DNA of 60,433 bases, the filler included, from Sluysia triapertura (taxonomy: Eukaryota): the NCBI GenBank assembly GCA_046118255.1. It is 5 parts of 5 records of this genome, joined end to end, with 100 filler letters (N's around TTAATTAATTAA, not from the genome) between each part and the next. Parts side by side here need not be neighbours in the genome. Positions count along the whole stretch, not along the records: positions 49,270 to 60,433 come from JBJNIA010188067.1; 4 more parts are not named here. One strand, 5' to 3'. The translations under genes were made by a program, and so were the position numbers. The first letter of the stretch is position 1. The number at the start of each line of letters is the position of its first letter. Under the pieces are notes generated by a model that did no database searches, had not been told where the DNA came from, and worked only from the letters and a program-made list of their open reading frames with translations. Shown one piece after another: positions 49,270 to 60,433 of the stretch.

Positions 49270-49314
<45 letters not shown>

Positions 49315-50191
49315 TTTATTTTTATTTTTATTTTTATTTTTATTTTGCTTTAGTTTGTTTTGTTTCCAAAATCTATAATTTAACAACAATGAAATTTGTA
49401 ATTGTTTGAAATATTTTTATTTATTTGTCACAGATGATTCCTAAATAAACAAATCAATATGTCTTTCAAATGTGTTGCTTCGTATTTTTTTTAAATTCAA
49501 TATATATATTTTTTTAGTGAATTAAACAAATTAAAATCGTTTAGATTGTTTTAATCAATTTTGCAACTAATATATGATTTCTACTTCCTACTTCTAATTT
49601 ATACAGATACGTTAAAGAAAACTTTTTATAAAAGTACAATCTTGAAAGTTTTTGAAAGTCGCCAAGATGATGGAGCCTCTGTTTACAATACCATGATTGA
49701 GACTACTTTAAATACAAAAATAGAATGCAATCATATTGATTGAAATTAATAAACTAGTAGAAATAATGTTACATTATAGCATTGTTTTGTTTTGTCTGTC
49801 GTGTTTTACATGTGAAGTTCATTCCTGAAGTTGTTTTTCACCAATTTATTTTAATAAGTATTTTGCAATGTTCAATTTCTTCATAGTGTTATTCAGTGTG
49901 CATATTTATTTAATCTCACAATCTAAAACACGACTCGAGCCTTTTTTGTCAACTTGCTCCCATAACTCTTTTAAAATCAAAACCCATTTAATTAAAATAT
50001 TGCTTAAAACTTACAACCGAATTTCTCAATTAACCCACAGTTTTATATGTTCGATAAAACATCATTCACATACATAAATCATTAAATAATTCAATTCTCT
50101 AAGTCGTTTACATCCTGAATAATAATCATTAAATTGTTTTAGTAAACATTGACGACAGTATTAGAAATATTTTTCACAAAATAACACATTT

Positions 50192-51223
50192 TAATGATCT
50201 TTAAAGAATGAAATTCTGAAATTATTTTTCGAACATTCGCAATTTGTAATCTACTTTTAATTTAAAATGATGGTAGATGACTAAAGTCCTTCTGGATTTA
50301 ACTACATTTAATTGTATATCTAAGCTGAAGGCCTAACTAGCATGTATATCTACTTCGTGGTTTATTATTTCTTTAATTTTTTTCTACTTTTCTAAACGTT
50401 AAAATATTTAAAATACAGTATGCTATGTGATTTTTTAACTAGCTTCTTAATTTCCTTAATTTGATTATTAATTTAACTGTGAGCTGTTTTTTCTCATGAT
50501 GAATCTTTGTATGTACAGATGTTTACGACACCGACTGTTATTAAACTTTATTATATTTATTCATATTATTTTAATTTTGATCTCTTTAGTATAACTTATT
50601 TATAACTCGTAGAGATTATGAATAATTCTTGATTAGTAGGTTCAGTATTGTACGTAACTTAAGGCTACTACTCAAAGATTGTAAATATTTTCTGTATTTT
50701 AATCGTGCTTAAGTAAGAAAACCAATAAAAATGAACTGACGAGTCTGCAAGATGGTAAGTCAAATATATGAGCGTAATTTCTCATCGGCGAATAGACCTC
50801 TGTCACCACAATATTTGATAATCAAAAATACCAAAACCGGTCGACGATTAAGGACACCTTACCTGGATTAAATAAAATTCAGTGGTTGTTTTTCAACAAT
50901 AACAATTTATTTACTTCAATTTACGTGAAACCACAATACAGTTGACCAAATAAAATTTGTGTGTAGTTTATAGATTTTTGACTATGAATTTTTTCCAACA
51001 ATGACTTATTGAGATTTAATGATACTAACCTCGATTTTATATTTTTCCTTTATAAAATTGCGTTGCTCTTATAAAACGTTGTAATGATCTTTAAAGAATA
51101 AAATTCTGAACATTCATAATTTGTAATGCACTTTTAATTTAAAATGTTTTATCAATAATGGTAAATGACTAAAGTCCTCTGGAAGGCACCTATACAGGAT
51201 TTAACTACATTTAATTATATATC
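50192..51223. repeat. Pair of ~130-140-bp direct repeats (50192-50320 and 51080-51223)
   Basis: TAATGATCTTTAAAGAAT.AAATTCTGAA...ACTTTTAATTTAAAATG...GACTAAAGTCCT...GGATTTAACTACATTTAATT occurs in both. Confidence 0.85.
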
Positions 51224-51344
51224 AATTAAAAAATACGCACATACATCTAATAATTATACTTTAATTAAAATTAAATTTGAAATATAATAATAATGGTTAC
51301 ATCATCATCATTATTATTATAAAATAAAATAAAATCGTTAGACG

Positions 51345-51415
51345 GGGCTGATAGCTCAGTGGTAGAGCATCGACTGCGCAGACAGAGGTCCCGGGTTCGA
51401 TCTCCGGTCAGTCCA
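51345..51415 (+). tRNA. tRNA(Ala)-like pseudo-tRNA inside mini-LTR copy B (element ends at 51432)
   Basis: Acceptor GGGCTGA/TCAGTCC with G3:U70 and A73, D arm GCTC/GAGC, T arm CCGGG-TTCGATC-TCCGG, then TTTT. The anticodon stem does not pair. Confidence 0.7.
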
Positions 51416-52440
51416 TTTTACGAAGTCTAACATTATTATTATTATGGTTATGTTGAAAATTTAAATATGTAATTTGAAATTACGTTGGCGCATAGTATTC
51501 ATATAAGTTACATTTATATATCAGATTATCATGGATGAAATTTGTAGCAAAAAAGTTTTCTTACTTAATTCCTGTACAAAATTATTTAATCAACGGTTCG
51601 TCTTTAGCATACTATTTATGAGGCGAAACTCAACATATCTATTTGTAGGCAAATACAAATTATCAACATATTAAAATCTACGAATATCTATTACTTCAAT
51701 ACTTTGATATAATTAATAAAAACATATAATGAATAAATACGTTAAAGCTAACACTAAATTAGCTGGGAAATACAGAATGAATTTAAGAAGTCGTAATAGA
51801 AATTAACAGATTAATATTATATCCAAGAAATATTAACGTATTGAATCTTTTAAATTAATACTAATTGTTTAATTTTAATTATAGGTTAAACTATCTTTAA
51901 AAATTAATATATTTTATCTGGATTTTATATTTCCTCCTTCCTTTAAAGAAGAAGAAACTTATAAAAATTAAACATACTACTTGACACGGAAAAAAATTTG
52001 ATGTTACTGAAATGGATCTTGATAAAACGAACGTCGTGAGCCAATTAATTTGATTAAAACTAAGTCGAACTTGATTCGACCAAGTTGTTAATGCCGATTT
52101 ATTGGATTAAGAATTAGGATGAATCTCTTGCACTAGTAGCCGAATTTTTAATTTTGTTGTAACTTATAAGAATGAATTCTTTATGTATTTTTTTGATATA
52201 AAATGATTTTTATGTTCAATTTTGCAAGATATATTATTACTTTATTATTACAAACTATTTATTATTATTTTATTGTTTTTTACGTAAAATTTTATTACTA
52301 TACATAAAAATTCATAAATAATTTTTTATTATTTTCATTATTTACATAAATATTGTGCATTATTATTCCAAAATTTAATTATCATTTTACTGTCGATAAA
52401 CAATCTATCAGTCATTACATTACAAATATAAAGAAATGTT

Positions 52441-52998
52441 TTATTCATCGAAATATGAACCCATATTATTTAAACATTTTTGCCATTTAAGCAGTAGGTT
52501 GTTCAAGCCGGTAATATAATTAATTCCTTGAAAATCCGTTTTACAGCATTGTCGAATTAAATTGTTTTCCTACTTATAAAAATGTCCAAACTGCGGAAGA
52601 AATGCTAGTCAGTGGGAGCATGGGGGATGCTGAAGATTTCTAATTCCTGTAATTTTGAGCAGCATTATCATGCAATAAAATAGAAGTACATTTGTTGACT
52701 AATCTAGGCTGTTTTCTTTAGGTTTTTGCTGTTTATTTCTTCTGTGATCGATGACCCAAGTTTCATGAAATCATAATGGATCGCAGCTGTGCTAGCAAGG
52801 CAAAGACTCATCAGCTTCTTTTGTAGAATATAGCGCTTTCGAATGTGTTTTGGTGATTTATCCTTGTCCTTAACTTTTACGATTGTCATACTGGATCTAT
52901 TCCTCATCACAAGTGACATCTCGATTCAAAAATGAATGAGATTCGTGACTAAAAAGCAACATCAAGCAAGTTTTCAAACGCTTTTGTTTCTGTTTTTC
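52441..52998 (-). mobile_element. mariner (DD34D) transposase remnant
   Basis: FLNRDVTCDEE*IQYDN, ILLHDNA, HPP..APTD*HFFRSL, KWQKC....GSYFDE*. Confidence 0.9.
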
Positions 52999-53464
52999 AT
53001 TCAATTCATGTGAAACGAACTTATCTAACTTTTTAATTACTTCCGATTTGAGCTAAATTAGTTACCAGACTCTGAGATGGGTCAAATTCATCAGTCATCT
53101 TTAATTCGTAATTATTGATCTTTGATTCTGGGCGACTGGATTGCTTATTTGTAAGGTCAACGATACGTATAAGTAATAAAACTATTTAGAAAACATGCAG
53201 CAATTTTTAGAAAATCGAAAACTATGCGCTACGCTTATTTTTGATGAGAAAAAATGATGGATAACACTTTTAAAATGAAATAATTATCCAAGTTGAACGA
53301 TTTGAAAAAAAGTGGAAAGTAATTCAATTTCTGAATAATTATTATTTTCAAAGAATTTTAAAACACTATTTAACGCATTAAATAAAAAATGGAAGATATG
53401 TCTGACTTATGTATTCAATGTTCACATGTACATGAAAATGAAAACTTCATATTTTTACAGTTAA

Positions 53465-53704
53465 CTCCTTAACTCGCACACTCGAATTAACTCGAGCGAG
53501 TTAAACCTGCAGAAATGAGCACACTCGAGTTAATTTGATTAATATATTAAGTTGTTTGGTATTAGAATTAACAGGCGTTAGTTACAGAGGTGCCAACTAC
53601 TAGTTATAAGACGCTTACACTAAAATATAGTTTAATAAATAATGCAGCAATAAAAAAATGAGTTTTTTGGACGTTTTTTGGAAAAAAAATTGAACGTTAA
53701 AGGG
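53465..53704. mobile_element. piggyBac-like MITE
   Basis: TTAA|CTCCTTAAC ... GTTAAAGGG|TTAA, with internal ACTCGAG/TTAACTCG dyads; carries an R3 fragment. Confidence 0.5.
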
Positions 53705-53944
53705 TTAAAAATGTGTAACAATTTTTATGAAACACAGAAAATAAGCTTTTAACGAATCAGAGACTCAAACCCAATCCAATTGAAATATAAATTTGTGACA
53801 TTGTGGAGTTTTATTTACATATATAAGCTGAGCTCCATTTTCTTTTAGAAATACTTTTGCACTGCAGAATCATTTTTGTATTAACTTTGTAAGTCTCGGA
53901 TAGCAGATGAATTCACTGATATGAAATTTATTTTATGAATGTAG

Positions 53945-54260
53945 GTTTTTTGGGATTGTCCAACATTGGAAAAATTAAGGAAGACGTAGAAATAAAATGT
54001 AGGAAGAATTGATACAAAACTATGTCAAAACAATAAAGTATTGTTGGAGTAAGAATGATGAAGATGAACCGACGAATACCTTGAAATTCCAAATATATTT
54101 ATAAGATTTTATGGAAGCTTGAGATGAGCTTAGAAAACGTCTATAAGCATTAAGTTACCTTTGAACTTGTGAATCTTCAGGTAATTTGAAACCTTTATAA
54201 GCATTTGAGACCTTTGAGTAATTTAATGAAGTATTTGAAATCTTTAAAACCTTTGGAAAA
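53945..54260. repeat. Interspersed repeat family R2, partial copy
   Basis: GGATTGTCCAAC and GCATTAAG.TAC.TTTGAACT.GTGAA are shared with 57330-57600. Confidence 0.6.
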
Positions 54261-54263
54261 TGG

Positions 54264-54355
54264 AGTTGGGTTACAGGCCTAAAGTGTCATAGATTAATGA
54301 TAGTGTAATTGACTATAATAAAACAAAAAATGTTAAATGGAGCTGATAGCTCAGT
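54264..54355 (+). mobile_element. tRNA-cassette mini-LTR copy C, truncated in the D-loop
   Basis: AGTTGGGTTACAGGCCTAAAGTG...GACTATAATAAAAC...GCTGATAGCTCAGT, then an abrupt switch to LINE sequence. Confidence 0.75.
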
Positions 54356-55924
54356 AACTAACTGGAAGCGCCATAGCAACCTACTTCAATACGTACAATG
54401 CAGATCCAGAATCAGTGGTAATAGACTGTGTGACATCAAACTTTGCGATTCATAATGACGTATAAGCATACCCAAACTCTGAAAGTGGACATATCAACCT
54501 TGAGGATGATCTTCAAAAATACTATTAACAGCTACATCTCAATCGACCCACTGAATTCACAGCCTGCCCATCTCATCCTACACAACCAATTCATCTGCAA
54601 TGTCATTTACACACATACATATCTTCCAGTCAAGACTACGTATACCGCACAAACTGGAGCAACTGACTGTGGAACCTATATTTGCTACCACACGGTATAA
54701 ACAGAACCCAAACTTAACCACCTTCGTGAAGCGAATATCCCAAATATCAGACAAGCCATTTATACTTGTGTGGCTCAATCAATCAACACATCTTCAAAAA
54801 TAAAACCCATCCCCCCAATCCAAGCACTATACTACAAAATGGGAAATAATAATATTCCAATTGATGAAATATTCCAAACCACATAATCAAACCATCAAAA
54901 TTTCGAAACATCATGGCGCAACATAAAAGAAGCCTTCGACAAGTACCATTGCAACCCATCCTGGATAAAATATTTTCCGAAGACCAAATGATCATAGGTA
55001 CTGCCAAACCCCCTAGGAAACCCACATCAGAGGAGATTTGCCAATACTACCCCTCCATTCGACCCACTCAAAATAACTACCATAACAACCTACATAGATT
55101 ACATGACAAATGATCCATACCTTGAAATTGAAATGCTTGCCTTTCTAGAGCACTGCAAAAACTCAGGACCAGGACCAAACTACATTATCTTTAACCAAAT
55201 CAAAAAAGCTGATCTCACTGATCAAATCCCGGCAATCCTCTTCAATAAAAAATCTATTGCACTGCTCATTATCCATCCCAACAAATACGATATGGTACAT
55301 GATGTTGCCTCCTGGATACCCATAGTTATTGTGGACTGTAGTTAAGGAGTCTTTGCAAAGATCCTGAACGATCGTTACTTACGTGAATACCTTATTCGAC
55401 TTATACTCTTCTAATCGCAAATACTCCTATTCCTCGCGTTATAGACACGAAGGAGATACTTCCATTCCATTTGGTGAAATCATACATTAGTCCATTGATG
55501 ACTTGTTAAACGAAAATATCAAGCTCACTGAATTGATGCGACAATCCAACCTCCTTGCCAAAAATAAGTTTATCGGAACTTTGTACAATCCCGACTTATA
55601 GAACCTGGATGTCAACCCAAGAGTACATGCGAAGCTTTGCGATACGACGAAAAAATCCACAAAATATTTTTTTCTCAACAACAGCTTTGCCTGGCGCACA
55701 AAAACCATGGTGGACTTGACCTGACCTCAGAATATGACGATAACATGTGCCAAAATATGGTGTGTGCGTTATATGCACGCTATATGCACGCTGGATCATC
55801 ATGAGGTCATACGTGTAGTCAATAACCGTAGCAACTATTACCCAGTCACTTCTATAGCTCAATGGAGGCCCCGTGGATAAACTTGCCAGACTACGGACTA
55901 AGACCAAGACTATGCGGTCTTAGT
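54356..55924 (+). mobile_element. NeSL/Utopia-like (RLE-clade) non-LTR retrotransposon remnant with a Ulp1-type protease
   Basis: AQTGATDCGTYIC (Ulp1 Q..G.DCG); KNSGPGPNYI...ILFN; WIPI...FAKILNDR (NWRPI..); RHEGD..SPL; HGGLDL. 3' hairpin ACTAAGACC-N10-GGTCTTAGT at 55897-55924. GC content is raised relative to the flanks. Confidence 0.7.
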
Positions 55925-56036
55925 ATTGTCATAAATATTATTGTTAATTTTGAAATTTACTTATTTTTCATTTAGTTTACTTGTATTATTGTTAAAGCAG
56001 AAACTTATATTAACGATTTGTATTTGATTTTGTAAT

Positions 56037-56191
56037 TGTTATATTTATAACAATGGACTGACCGGGGATCGAACCCGGGACCTCTCGCTGCGCAGTTCGA
56101 TGCTCTAATACTGAGCTATCATCCCGTCTGGGAATTTTATTTTATTATAGTCAATTTTACCAAACGGCATTTTAGGCCTTTTACTCCAACA
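56037..56191 (-). mobile_element. tRNA-cassette mini-LTR copy D (155 bp, full length; tRNA-like part about 56054-56124)
   Basis: Minus strand reads TGTTGGAG...TAACA; flanks TAAT/TATT; intact B-box GGTTCGATCCCC. Confidence 0.8.
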
Positions 56192-57239
56192 TATTATTGA
56201 ATTAATTACTGCTATTAATTTGAAATAAGAGCGTAGTTTTTGGTTGAATAAATATCATTATTAAAATAAGAAATTTTGTGATAAGTTATACTTGATCTAG
56301 CGAATATTGAAATTATTTGAGATTTTATTTAAGTAAATTAAATTGATATCGGTTTATTGTTACTATTAATTTCAAAGACGCGAGAGTAACACTACTGACT
56401 TTTTAAGGAGCTTTATTATTAGATACTGGAGTTTTTAACAGAATCGTTTTTGTAGATAATATCTATTCACAATTATGTGTTAGTTATTGATAATCATAGG
56501 AAGATGTTTCCTCTAGAACCATATAATTTAAATAGAGACCCTATTTGCTAAGTTAATTAAAATTCTATAGTTACGTCTTTAGAAATAATATAAAACGTAT
56601 GCTGTAGACTATTTTTCAAGAGAAATACAAAGCACAGAGAATTCGAATTTGTTTGATAATAATTTTATTTTAATGTTATAAAAATATTTTGAAGTCTTGA
56701 GAGGTTAGTATATCATGTACAGCGCTAAGTTATAAAATTGGGATTTAAAATGATTTATGTTTATTGATTTTTTTCTGTTTTTTAACCGATGATAAAATTA
56801 TAAGTCTAAAATAACTCACCATAGTTATTTCATGTTTTGTATCTTATTAATAACCTTTATATTATACTTAAATATTAATAAAATTAAAAAACCTTATAAA
56901 GCACGTGTCTAACAATTAAAACGTTATAGGTATTCCTAAACAATGCGGATTCTAGATCAGTTTAAGGATAGCCATATACACGTGTGGTGGTCACCACCAT
57001 TAGACGGAATTTTAACACGCCACAAAACACCAAAATTTACATTGACATAGCATCTAAATCATTCATCACATCAAAATATACTAAATTTACTTTTTAAAAT
57101 CCAAAAAAATAAAACGAAATGAAATATCACTGACTTTCTCTTACAACTCTTTCTCTTATTCAATTTCACTTCTCCTTAACCTCCTACCTAACTGTCTTTC
57201 TTTAACAACAATTTGTATTATATTGACGAAGTTTCCAAA

Positions 57240-57930
57240 TGTATACAATCTCTGGACAGTATAACGGAAGATCCATATAGCTTTTCATTTCAAAAGAAAA
57301 CTCTGCTTATATCACAAATAAAAGTGTTAGGATTGTCCAACCGAGAAACATGTAGAACTACAAAATGAAGAAAGAACTGATACTAAGTGATGAATTGAAC
57401 ATAATAAGCAGCGTTGAAATAAGAATCATAAAATTTAAACATTTATAATAGTGTTAATAGCTAAAAAAAACATTGGCATTCCAAAGATATATGAAAGTTT
57501 ATGAAATATCTATGAAAGACCTTTATGGAAGTTTCAGATGAATTGGAAAAACCTTTTGAAGCATTAAGGTACTTTTGAACTGGTGAACCGTTAGATCGTT
57601 TGAGACCTTAGTAACCTTTAAGTATTCTTAGAATATCGATAAGTATTTGAGACCCTTTAGTAACCTTATAAAGTTATTTAAAATCTTTAATATAATTGAG
57701 AAATATTGTTGTTATTGGTATTGTGAATAAGTTTAATATAGTAATAATTAACATGAAGAAGTAAAAAAGGAATCAAATAGGTGAAGGTGAAAACATCTAG
57801 AGCCTTCTAAATGCCTTATAAATTACTACATAGCTTTAGAACCTGAATAAAACATAGAATAAGATTCAGTCTAAAAATAGAATTAATTAATTAAATCACA
57901 ATTAACTTAATTAAGAAAAAGTACGTTTTT
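57240..57930. repeat. Interspersed repeat family R2, longest copy
   Basis: Aligns by eye with 10900-11155, 41865-42400 and 53945-54260; degenerate internal GACCTT/TTTGAA periodicity. Confidence 0.65.
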
Positions 57931-58849
57931 GTGAATAACTTTTGAATGCAGAACGCTTGTGATGGCCAACTTCTTCACATAAAATTTTATTACATCTCAA
58001 TACATTAAAAAACTTAAAAACTTCATAAGATCAAAAATCATTAAATTCGTAATTTAAATTTAAATATAGTAATAAATTAAATGGAATTTCGTTTAACACC
58101 TTTAACTTTCTTATTACACTCTTTGATATTCCTTCACAATCTTCACTTCATGTTAAGTCTACCTTTTTAATCACCAAAGTGTCATTTTATTATATGTTTA
58201 TGAAATAAAACATTTATGTTAACAATTTATATTTTAAAGAGATTATTTTGTATAGAATTAGAAGAATANNNNNNNNNNNNNNNNNNNNNNNNNNNNNNNN
58301 NNNNNNNNNNNNNNNNNNNNNNNNNNNNNNNNNNNNNNNNNNNNNNNNNNNNNNNNNNNNNNNNNNNNNNNNNNNNNNNNNNNNNNNNNNNNNNNNNNNN
58401 NNTAACAAAAGACTTAACTATCAGCAAAATAAATTATTATTCAGACTCCGTTTACAGTATACAACTTACTAATGGCTTACCTGTAAAATTACGTGAGAAC
58501 AATCCTAAAGATTAACAATATAAAAATACTCTTTGCCTTAACTTAAACAATAGAGAACAAAATCGTCGATTATATCGACTGGTAACTAAATAGCTTATAG
58601 AGTATAATGTTAATAACGACCAACGCGGGCGTTTGTATTTAAGTTTAATGCTGAAAATATTAGTTTAAAAATGTATTTCTTTATTATCCTTAAAAACTAC
58701 AATTATTTACTACAATTATTAATCACTATTCTAATGATCTAAAATTTAAAATGACTAAAAGTTTATTATATAACAAAAAGTAAATACGCCGAAATTAAAA
58801 TAAAACAATTTTAAATTTGTAAAAATGATAAGACAAACAATGTTAATCA

Positions 58850-60120
58850 AATAATAATAATTATAATAACAATATTAAATTTATTTATAATAAGAGGTCT
58901 AGCCCGAATTTGTAAGTGACCTTAATGGCCAACTGAAAATTAGGTATTTTACGTGGAGATTTTAACTCTAGTGAGTTTTCACTTTATTTAAAATAAACTT
59001 ACTATTCAATCAATAAATTAATAAACGATGAGCGAATATTCGAGATAGGAGGATTGTTTTTGTTTGCTTAATTGGTCGGATATGAGAGAATTTGGAGCTG
59101 AGATATCTTTAATCGAATACGCGAGATCTAATTCTGCTTTGTAATTGATTTGAATTGCTACGGCCGTTGAATACCAAAAAGAAACCGAAACGATGATTTA
59201 AATTAACTGCTTGAATTAGTAAAATGACGATTATCAAAATGGTCGTCTGTTATCCTTTGTTTGTCTTTATATAGTTTTTGTACCTATAAATGTTGGGGTA
59301 AAAAGGCCTAAGGTGCCATTTGATAAAATTGACTATAATAAAATAAAATTCCCAGACGGGACTGATAGCTCAGTGGTAGAGCATCGAACTGCGCAGCGAA
59401 AGGTTCCAGATTCGATCCCCGGTCAGTCCATTTTATGAAGTCTAACATAAAGACGCATATATTAAAATTAATTCATTAAAATTATTCCTTGTTCTCGATT
59501 ATTTTCGATAATTTAAATTCTTTATAATTAGATTTTTTTATAATTTTTATAATTGTTAAAGAAAATAATAATCATAATTTTTTGTTATTTTTTAATAATT
59601 TTTATAATACTTTATAAGATTTTTGAAAATTTTTTAAATACAAATAAAATATAAAATATAAAACAAAAAAATAAAATTTTTTACATATTTACACATTTAT
59701 TATTATTATTTTGTTTATTAATTATTATTAGCATTATTATTGTCACTATTATAATTATTTGTAATCACCGTAACTGTCAGTTTTGACAGCTTTTAATTAA
59801 TCAGTATTTCATTTACTGATAATTGTTATTACAAAATTTTTAATTAGTTTTATGTTGAGGACCTTAACAACAAAATTAGTTGTCTGTTTATTGGCCATTA
59901 CTATTCACTTTGTTCCTGCTTTCAATGGCCAACGAATCACAATACATTTGCAATTTATGTACAATCACAAAAATAATGGCTCACTTTTTAATTAACTAAT
60001 GCACGAAATCACATTTAATAATAATTATAATAACAATATTAAATTTATTTATAATAAGAGGTCTAGCCCGAAGACTCTACCTGCTGATAATGATTTTGTA
60101 ATTGACCTTAATGGCCAACT
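58850..60120. repeat. Pair of ~85-100-bp direct repeats (58850-58934 and 60017-60120)
   Basis: AATAATTATAATAACAATATTAAATTTATTT.TAATAAGAGGTCTAGCCCGAA...TTTGTAA.TGACCTTAATGGCCAACT occurs in both. Confidence 0.85.
59291..59447 (+). mobile_element. tRNA-cassette mini-LTR copy E (157 bp, full length, 4-bp TSD; tRNA-like part 59359-59430)
   Basis: TAAA|TGTTGG...CTAACA|TAAA. Perfect 7-bp acceptor GGACTGA/TCAGTCC, A-box TAGCTCAGTGG, B-box-like TTCGATCC, TTTT terminator. Confidence 0.85.
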
Positions 60121-60433
60121 AAAGTTGTACCAAATAAACATTGGCAACTTGCTCTTTTTCTATCAAACGAATTTATATAGAATATTTTGATAAATTTAGT
60201 GTCAAATTCTATTAACCAGATTGATCAATGCTTTAGTCATGAACATTTTCAAAAGAACATAGTAATTCAAAGTCATATACTCAATCTATGTTATAAAAAA
60301 TGAATAATATACTAATGAATTAGTAGTAGGTATGGGCACATTTCTTATGATTTAAAGAATTGTTTATCTGCTTTGATTGAATTAAAAAAAGATTTAGACA
60401 ATATTTTTCTAAGAATTAATGCAATAAAAGATA

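What the first reader, a model, noticed from the sequence alone, without database searches (positions are those of the whole stretch)
59291..59447. Mini-LTR carrying a complete Pol III tRNA(Ala)-like gene: a possible tRNA analogue of Cassandra TRIMs
Seen: five copies (10171, ~51320, 54264, 56037 on minus, 59291) share the tRNA-like body, up to ~65 bp of upstream sequence and ~17 bp downstream. The two full copies (157 and 155 bp) have TGTTGG...TAACA inverted termini. Copy E has a perfect 4-bp TSD (TAAA); copy D has a 1-mismatch one. Inside are TATAATAA about 25 nt upstream, A and B boxes and a TTTT terminator. Known: tRNA-SINEs begin at the tRNA 5' end and finish in a tail; TG..CA plus a 4-bp TSD is the Ty3/gypsy integrase signature; Cassandra TRIMs carry 5S/Pol III sequence in their LTRs. 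Inference: these are solo LTRs of a retroelement that captured a tRNA gene, either as a Pol III promoter or as a source of small RNA/primer.
Basis: partly seen in the sequence, partly recalled or inferred. Interest (0 to 1): 0.85.

Follow-up and report, generated by a model that had tools for sequence, protein, structure and literature searches.

The report
tRNA-like mini-repeat, probable solo LTRs
A 155-157 bp dispersed repeat carrying a decayed tRNA-Ala-like Pol III cassette is real and looks like solo LTRs of a small retrotransposon, but that type of element (Helenus, "TRIMp3") was described in 2024 and the LTR reading cannot be proven from this 11-kb piece.

Summary
Four copies lie in the piece: E 59291-59447 (+), D 56037-56191 (-), B 51320-51432 (+, lacks the first 43 nt) and C 54261-54356 (+, cut by a LINE fragment). 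E and D share both ends (TGTTGG...TAACA). E has a perfect 4-bp flanking repeat (TAAA) and D has 3 of 4. Local chance rates are 0.85% and 8.7%.

The core matches Rfam tRNA at 39-43 bits, with A box, B box and, in two copies, TTTT. It is not a working tRNA: ARAGORN finds none, and the anticodon stem pairs in only 29% of cells.

Animal Helenus has LTRs of 104-323 bp, 4-bp TSDs and many solo LTRs. This element has that architecture, but its diagnostic k-mers are absent from the published consensus set.

LTR status is not proven. The piece holds no paired copies, PBS or PPT. Copy B is a 5'-truncated segment inside an (ATT)n run, which suits LINE-type retroposition or a later deletion.

Verdict: probable new Helenus-like family (about 0.5). 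Modest interest.

The parts
59291..59447 (+). Copy E, full unit (157 bp): TGTTGG...TAACA
59287..59290 (.). 5' flanking repeat TAAA of copy E
   Evidence: chance 0.85%
59448..59451 (.). 3' flanking repeat TAAA of copy E
59291..59358 (+). Non-tRNA 5' part of E (U3-like). It is 90% identical to D, with only transitions and 2 gaps
59334..59341 (+). TATAATAA, 25 nt upstream of tRNA-like +1; shared by E, D, C and, as a variant, B
59359..59430 (+). tRNA-like core of E (Rfam RF00005, 40.6 bits). Acceptor, D and T arms are present; there is no anticodon stem
59366..59376 (+). A box TAGCTCAGTGG
   Evidence: read against the established Pol III consensus TRGCNNAGTGG
59409..59419 (+). B box GATTCGATCCC (one mismatch to GGTTCGANTCC; intact in D and B)
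59431..59447 (+). Tail TTTTATGAAGTCTAACA (T4 run plus 13 nt, U5-like)
56037..56191 (-). Copy D, full unit (155 bp). Flanks are AATA (rc of 56192-56195) and ATTA (rc of 56033-56036). The tRNA-like part is 56054-56125
51320..51432 (+). Copy B, equal to E positions 44-157. The tRNA-like part is 51345-51415 (43.2 bits). It is abutted by ATT repeats at 51310-51318 and 51432-51443
54261..54356 (+). Copy C, 5' part only. It carries a 9-nt insertion and ends at tRNA position about 17, where a degenerate 5'-truncated LINE fragment begins

Best explanation
The 155-157 bp units are most likely solo LTRs, plus one truncated and one interrupted copy, of a small non-autonomous LTR retrotransposon of the Helenus/TRIMp3 kind. 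In that kind of TRIM, the LTR carries a tRNA-derived Pol III promoter cassette.

Inferred layout:
- U3 is positions 1-68 and contains a TATA-like box at -25.
- R is roughly the tRNA-Ala-like core (A box, B box, G3:U70 in two copies).
- U5 is the 17-nt tail that starts with TTTT.

Inferred mechanism:
- Pol III, or Pol II from the TATA box, starts near tRNA +1 in the 5' LTR.
- It reads through the weak T4 run and the short internal region.
- It ends in the 3' LTR.
- A Gypsy-type reverse transcriptase and integrase supplied in trans copies the RNA and inserts it into AT-rich DNA with 4-bp duplications.
- LTR-LTR recombination then leaves solo LTRs.

What is shown: the repeat, its sharp TG...CA ends, the 4-bp flanking repeats, and the tRNA-like Pol III motifs without an anticodon stem.

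What is inferred: LTR status, the U3/R/U5 split, transcription, and the trans-acting partner.
For: - Both full copies have identical ends, TGTTGG...TAACA, and B shares the 3' end.
- Flanking repeats are 4/4 (E) and 3/4 (D), against local chance rates of 0.85% and 8.7%.
- The shared sequence includes about 68 nt upstream of tRNA +1 in E, D and C (C scores 16 and 14 against a background maximum of 11-12). It also includes 13 nt beyond a T4 run. A Pol III SINE transcript would not carry either.
- The tRNA core has A and B boxes but no anticodon stem. Helenus LTRs are described the same way (PMC10886601).
- Animal Helenus LTRs are 104-323 bp with 4-bp TSDs, and LTRs outnumber internal parts about 2-12 fold.
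- Published Helenus LTRs have the same order: TGT..., upstream part, tRNA-like part, T-run, short tail...ACA.
- An ant TRIM (PbTRIM) has 152-184 bp LTRs, AT-rich 4-bp TSDs, clustering and many solo LTRs (PMC3532108).
Against: - No two copies in the piece flank an internal domain.
- No PBS-like or polypurine sequence adjoins any copy.
- Only two complete copies carry the TSD argument, and both TSDs consist only of A and T.
- B lacks the first 43 nt and sits inside a continuous (ATT)n run. That looks like insertion of a truncated copy. An integrase cannot do this, so a later microhomology deletion has to be invoked.
- Four copies in 11 kb is a density more usual for SINEs or MITEs.
- There is no sequence similarity to any published Helenus outside the generic tRNA parts.
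- No genome-wide census was possible.
Confidence: 0.5

Rival explanations
1. It is a non-LTR retroposon (SINE-like) mobilised by a LINE through target-primed reverse transcription. The RNA would begin at TGTTGG, upstream of the tRNA-like part.
For: B is a 5'-truncated copy (E positions 44-157) set precisely inside an (ATT)n run, and 5' truncation is the hallmark of TPRT. A LINE fragment is present in the piece. Local copy density is high. The 3' half of the tRNA-like part matches SINE-like repeats in insect-host contigs from metagenomes at 94% over 34-36 nt.
Against: A and B boxes would start Pol III at tRNA +1, so the 68 upstream nt shared by E, D and C would not be copied. A T4 run lies 13 nt before the shared 3' end. 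There is no A-rich or repeat tail. The flanking repeats of E and D are short (4 bp). The TG...CA ends would be unexplained.
Confidence: 0.2
2. It is a non-autonomous DNA transposon (MITE-like, for example derived from a Ginger-type or other element that makes 4-bp TSDs) that captured a tRNA-like gene together with its promoter and terminator.
For: The unit behaves like a gene with flanks moved as DNA: upstream TATA-like box, T4 terminator, sharp ends, short TSD. Ginger elements have TGT...ACA ends and 4-bp TSDs (my own knowledge, not tested here).
Against: The terminal inverted repeat is only 4-5 nt (TGTTG/TAACA), far short of typical MITE TIRs. The truncated copy B is not expected. No transposase partner was seen apart from an unrelated mariner remnant.
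Confidence: 0.1
3. It is an ordinary dispersed tRNA-Ala pseudogene family spread by small segmental duplications, not a mobile unit.
For: The upstream TATA box, the tRNA-like body and the T4 run together look like a native Pol III locus.
Against: Homology stops at the same nucleotide at both ends in independent copies with unrelated flanks and in both orientations. All copies share the same broken anticodon arm.
Confidence: 0.07

Closest known systems
Helenus (TRIMp3), TRIMs with a tRNA-derived sequence in the LTR; Kojima 2024, Biology 13:119, PMC10886601
   Same: Short unit (157 bp, against 104-323 bp in animals). TGT...ACA ends. The tRNA-like part with A and B boxes lies mid-unit in sense orientation and is followed by a T-run and a short tail. 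It is not a functional tRNA. TSDs are 4 bp in animals. Solo LTRs predominate.
   Different: No paired LTRs, PBS or PPT were seen here. There is no sequence similarity to the published consensus set apart from generic tRNA motifs. This unit is AT-rich (about 42% GC) with a TATA-like box, whereas the hymenopteran Helenus consensus LTRs read look GC-rich and begin TGTAACG, TGTGACG or TGTCACG. Its TGTTGG start resembles the Copia-driven fungal families, which make 5-bp TSDs. The host is unknown.
Cassandra TRIMs (5S rRNA-derived Pol III unit in the LTR; Kalendar et al. 2008, as cited in PMC10886601)
   Same: The concept is the same: a small-RNA gene with Pol III promoter and terminator inside a short LTR.
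   Different: Cassandra carries 5S, not a tRNA. No 5S match was found in the piece. It occurs in plants and makes 5-bp TSDs.
PbTRIM of ants (Zhou & Cahan 2012, PMC3532108)
   Same: An insect TRIM with 152-184 bp LTRs (U3 61-64 nt with a TATA box, R 68-70 nt), AT-rich 4-bp TSDs, a preference for AT-rich DNA, clustering and many solo LTRs.
   Different: No tRNA-like part is reported for it. None of this element's k-mers occurs in its supplementary alignments.
tRNA-derived SINEs (SINE2)
   Same: A tRNA-derived Pol III head with a decayed anticodon arm. One copy here is 5'-truncated. The T arm and acceptor are shared with insect SINE-like repeats.
   Different: In SINE2 the tRNA-like part sits at the 5' end. 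Here 68 shared nt precede it, only 17 nt follow it, and there is no tail repeat.

Membership tests
Helenus / TRIMp3 | tRNA-derived sequence with conserved A and B boxes inside the terminal repeat | tested here: met
   Rfam tRNA at 39-43 bits in E, D and B. A and B boxes were read. Cloverleaf arms other than the anticodon arm are kept.
Helenus / TRIMp3 | Repeat unit ends 5'-TG...CA-3' | tested here: met
   E and D run TGTTGG...TAACA, and B shares the 3' end.
Helenus / TRIMp3 | TSDs of 4 bp (animal families) | tested here: inconclusive
   E has 4/4 (TAAA) and D has 3/4 (AATA/ATTA). Chance rates are 0.85% and 8.7%. Only two testable copies exist, and both TSDs are made only of A and T.
Helenus / TRIMp3 | Two LTRs in direct orientation around a short internal part with PBS and PPT | tested here: inconclusive
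   None was found in this 11-kb piece. Solo LTRs would lack these features. A genome-wide search was not possible.
Helenus / TRIMp3 | Sequence relation to a published Helenus family | tested here: not met
   The k-mers cagtccatt, cagacggg, gagcatcga and gactataataaa are absent from DataS1.fa. Only generic tRNA k-mers match. Membership does not require this, because the families have multiple origins.
Cassandra | 5S rRNA-derived sequence in the LTR | tested here: not met
   The Rfam scan at E<=1 found only the three tRNA hits.
SINE2 (tRNA-derived SINE) | tRNA-related head at the 5' end of the element | tested here: not met
   About 68 shared nt precede the tRNA-like part in E, D and C.
SINE2 (tRNA-derived SINE) | A-rich or simple-repeat 3' tail, variable TSDs, 5' truncations | tested here: inconclusive
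   No tail is present: the unit ends GTCTAACA. B is 5'-truncated inside an (ATT)n run.
MITE | Terminal inverted repeats of about 10 nt or more | tested here: not met
   Only TGTT(G)/(T)AACA match between the two ends.
Functional tRNA gene | Cloverleaf with an anticodon stem-loop | tested here: not met
   ARAGORN finds no gene. The anticodon stem is paired in 29% of cells. MFE folds are not cloverleaves.

The most novel reading that the evidence does not exclude
This is an independent Helenus-type (TRIMp3) lineage in a host outside the chalcid and cynipid wasps, which are the only arthropods reported so far. Its R region would be essentially the whole tRNA-Ala-like unit, and its AT-rich LTR would carry its own TATA-like upstream promoter. 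Less likely, a Pol III gene cassette with its upstream promoter is being moved by a mechanism that is neither LTR-type nor classical SINE-type.
Probability: 0.35. Interest if true: 0.45.

Novelty: new member of a known kind. Interest (0 to 1): 0.3.

Why it matters
If confirmed, it would add a lineage to the recently defined TRIMp3 class. It would also show that tRNA-like 'genes' in this AT-rich genome are largely retrotransposon LTRs, which matters for tRNA gene annotation and for counting Pol III-bound sites.

Tried and rejected
- **Metagenome scan** for the T arm, acceptor and TT: six contigs (L001-L006, 40-54% GC; from their JGI contig names I take them for termite-gut samples, which no tool output states). 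They share only the 3' half of the tRNA-like part, so they are not the same family.
- **Genome contigs and viral-contig scans** with the family-specific anticodon-region pattern: only chance hits of 18-20 nt in GC-rich bacteria.
- **Protein route to more genome sequence:**
  - The 46-aa ORF across E has no homologue.
  - An 80-aa LINE ORF is not on record.
  - The 115-aa LINE piece has one weak representative hit. Its contig (L130, GCA_019364655.1) shares no DNA with the piece.
- **'Empty site' idea:** the R1 repeat at 57330-57720 was considered as an empty site for copy C. The 14-nt match after the LINE fragment is not significant (score 23 against 20.6 +/- 3.3).
- **B as a full-length but diverged copy:** rejected. 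Its upstream sequence scores at background.
- **PBS search:** the cassette's own 3' end and 12 common tRNA primers were tried with up to 2 mismatches. Nothing lies adjacent to any copy. GGTTATG lies 13 nt after B and matches the first 7 nt of the copia-type half-tRNA-iMet PBS. It was judged to be chance.
- **Literal sequence search in papers**: irrelevant hits only.
- **PbTRIM supplement:** no shared k-mers.

Full report
**Setting.** The piece (49270-60433) is 28% GC and full of repeats. It is clearly eukaryotic. It holds a degenerate mariner transposase remnant on the minus strand (PF01359, E = 6.6e-5). It also holds a 5'-truncated, stop-ridden non-LTR (LINE) fragment at about 54357-55930. 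It carries no evident host gene. The organism could not be identified.

**Is the repeat real?** Yes.
- BLASTN of copy E against the piece finds D on the minus strand (88% over all 157 nt), B (87% over E positions 44-157) and C (80% over E 37-84, plus E 14-29).
- The repeat finder and MAFFT agree.
- E (59291-59447) and D (56037-56191) have the same two ends, TGTTGG...TAACA. Outside these ends their flanks are unrelated.
- B (51320-51432) ends at the same TAACA.
- C (54261-54356) begins at the same GTTGGG. It stops at tRNA position about 17, where the LINE fragment starts.

**The tRNA-like core.**
- Rfam's tRNA model matches B, E and D at 43.2, 40.6 and 39.1 bits (gathering score 29). In all three the alignment skips the anticodon arm.
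- ARAGORN calls no tRNA.
- Cloverleaf counting on the three aligned cores gives acceptor 95% paired, D stem 100%, T stem 87% and anticodon stem only 29%. Free-energy folds are not cloverleaves.
- B and D keep a G3:U70 pair, the classical tRNA-Ala identity mark (established knowledge). 'Ala-like' is therefore fair.
- A box: TAGCTCAGTGG, intact in E and B, mutated in D.
- B box: GGTTCGATC(C/T)C, intact in D and B, with one mismatch in E.
- TTTT directly follows the discriminator base in E and B. D has TTGTT.
- TATAATAA lies 25 nt upstream in E and D, with variants in C and B.
- The unit therefore carries Pol III promoter motifs but not a functional tRNA. The same broken anticodon arm in all copies shows that they descend from one already decayed ancestor.

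**Ends and flanking repeats.**
- With the boundaries fixed by TG and CA, E is flanked by TAAA/TAAA and D by AATA/ATTA.
- Sliding the same test along the piece gives 0.85% for a 4/4 match and 8.7% for at least 3/4. The joint chance is below 0.1% before allowing for choice of length and boundary, and perhaps 1% after.
- This is suggestive, but it rests on two copies and on A/T-only tetramers.

**What the layout excludes.**
- E, D and C share about 68 nt upstream of tRNA +1. C's first 43 nt score 16 and 14 against E and D, where the background maximum is 11-12.
- All full 3' ends share 13 nt beyond a T4 run.
- A Pol III transcript driven by the A and B boxes would contain neither segment. A classical tRNA-SINE is therefore a poor fit.
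- The terminal inverted repeat is only 4-5 nt, which is poor for a MITE.
- Sharp common ends with unrelated flanks, in both orientations, argue against segmental duplication of a tRNA locus.

**The awkward copy.**
- B lacks the first 43 nt. Its upstream sequence scores at background against them (p = 0.31 and 0.52).
- B is abutted on both sides by ATT repeats (51310-51318 and 51432-51443). Read across the insert, these form one continuous (ATT)n tract.
- Such runs cover only 1.3% of the piece. B therefore looks like a truncated segment inserted into a microsatellite.
- That is typical of LINE-type target-primed reverse transcription. It is not expected from an integrase.
- Under the LTR reading, one must assume a later microhomology (TAT/ATT) deletion at a slippage-prone site. 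That is possible, but it is an extra assumption.

**Search for LTR partners.**
- No two copies flank a plausible internal domain. B and C are 2.8 kb apart, with a mariner remnant between them.
- No sequence complementary to the cassette's own 3' end, or to 12 common primer tRNAs, lies next to any copy.
- The 40 nt upstream of each copy contain no polypurine tract.
- If these are LTRs, all of them are solo.

[quoted passage not shown] Together with Cassandra and Ajax they form 'TRIMp3'.
- Animal Helenus LTRs are 104-323 bp and make 4-bp TSDs.
- They appear to be mobilised by Gypsy elements.
- They usually cannot encode a functional tRNA.
- They show no PBS complementary to their own tRNA-like part.
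- LTRs outnumber internal parts about 2-12 fold.
- In arthropods they are reported only from chalcid and cynipid wasps.
- The consensus LTRs I could read have the same order of parts as this unit: TGT..., upstream segment, tRNA-like part, T-run, short tail...ACA.
- This unit's diagnostic k-mers are absent from the paper's consensus file, so it is not one of the published families.
- The TGTTGG start recurs in the Copia-driven fungal families, which make 5-bp TSDs. E's flanks fit 4 bp, not 5.
- The ant element PbTRIM shows that insect TRIMs can have 152-184 bp LTRs, AT-rich 4-bp TSDs, clustering and abundant solo LTRs (PMC3532108). It shares no k-mers with this unit.

**Origin hint.**
- A metagenome scan returned insect-host-like contigs. 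From their JGI contig names I take these for termite-gut samples; no tool output states the sample type.
- Their SINE-like repeats share the T arm, the unusual acceptor 3' strand (GGTCAGTCCA) and the following TT(T) with this unit. Identity is 94% over 34-36 nt. Nothing else is shared.
- This fits Kojima's proposal that Helenus arises when a SINE2 inserts into a TRIM LTR. It is only a hint.

**Limits.**
- Scans of bacterial and viral collections gave only chance hits.
- Protein-based routes to more of this genome failed.
- The decisive genome-wide tabulation of ends, TSDs and paired copies could not be made.

**Verdict.**
- The best reading (about 0.5) is solo LTRs of a new Helenus-like TRIMp3 family.
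- A LINE-mobilised retroposon (about 0.2) and a DNA-transposon derivative (about 0.1) remain open, mainly because of copy B and the lack of paired LTRs.
- The concept is already known, so novelty is 'new member of a known kind' and interest is modest.

Noticed in passing
window 52444-53185 (-): Degenerate mariner-type transposase remnant with several stops and frameshifts. One 73-aa piece hits PF01359 Transposase_1 (E = 6.6e-5, 23.2 bits).
   Followed up: partly
window 54357-55930 (+): 5'-truncated, stop-ridden non-LTR retrotransposon fragment (end of the endonuclease domain and start of the RT, by eye). It interrupts copy C. There are no Pfam hits and only one weak hit among 1.8 billion representative proteins, so it may be an old or lineage-specific LINE.
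   Followed up: partly
window 53950-54260 and 57330-57720 (+): Repeat 'R1', about 330-400 bp and 75% identical, with several indels. The first copy ends exactly where copy C begins. Its nature is unknown.
   Followed up: partly
window 58852-58937 and 60016-60123 (+): Repeat 'R2': 57 nt are 100% identical and a further 32 nt are 91% identical, separated by a 22-nt indel. The two copies are direct, 1164 bp apart, and bracket copy E. The 9-mer ATGGCCAAC occurs four times between 57960 and 60120 (read).
   Followed up: no
window 50181-50320 and 51071-51223 (+): Repeat 'R3', about 150 nt and 82-96% identical in blocks with indels. The second copy lies about 100 nt upstream of copy B. It may be a MITE.
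   Followed up: no
L001-L006 (JGI metagenome contigs; taken for termite-gut samples from their names): Insect-host-like contigs (40-54% GC) carry SINE-like repeats whose tRNA-like 3' half (GGTTCGATCCCCGGTCAGTCCATT) is nearly identical to this element's, while the rest differs. This suggests a widespread insect SINE head of the same tRNA type.
   Followed up: partly
window 49270-49314; 58269-58402: An (ATT)15 microsatellite sits at the start of the piece. A 134-N assembly gap lies further on and was left untouched.
   Followed up: no
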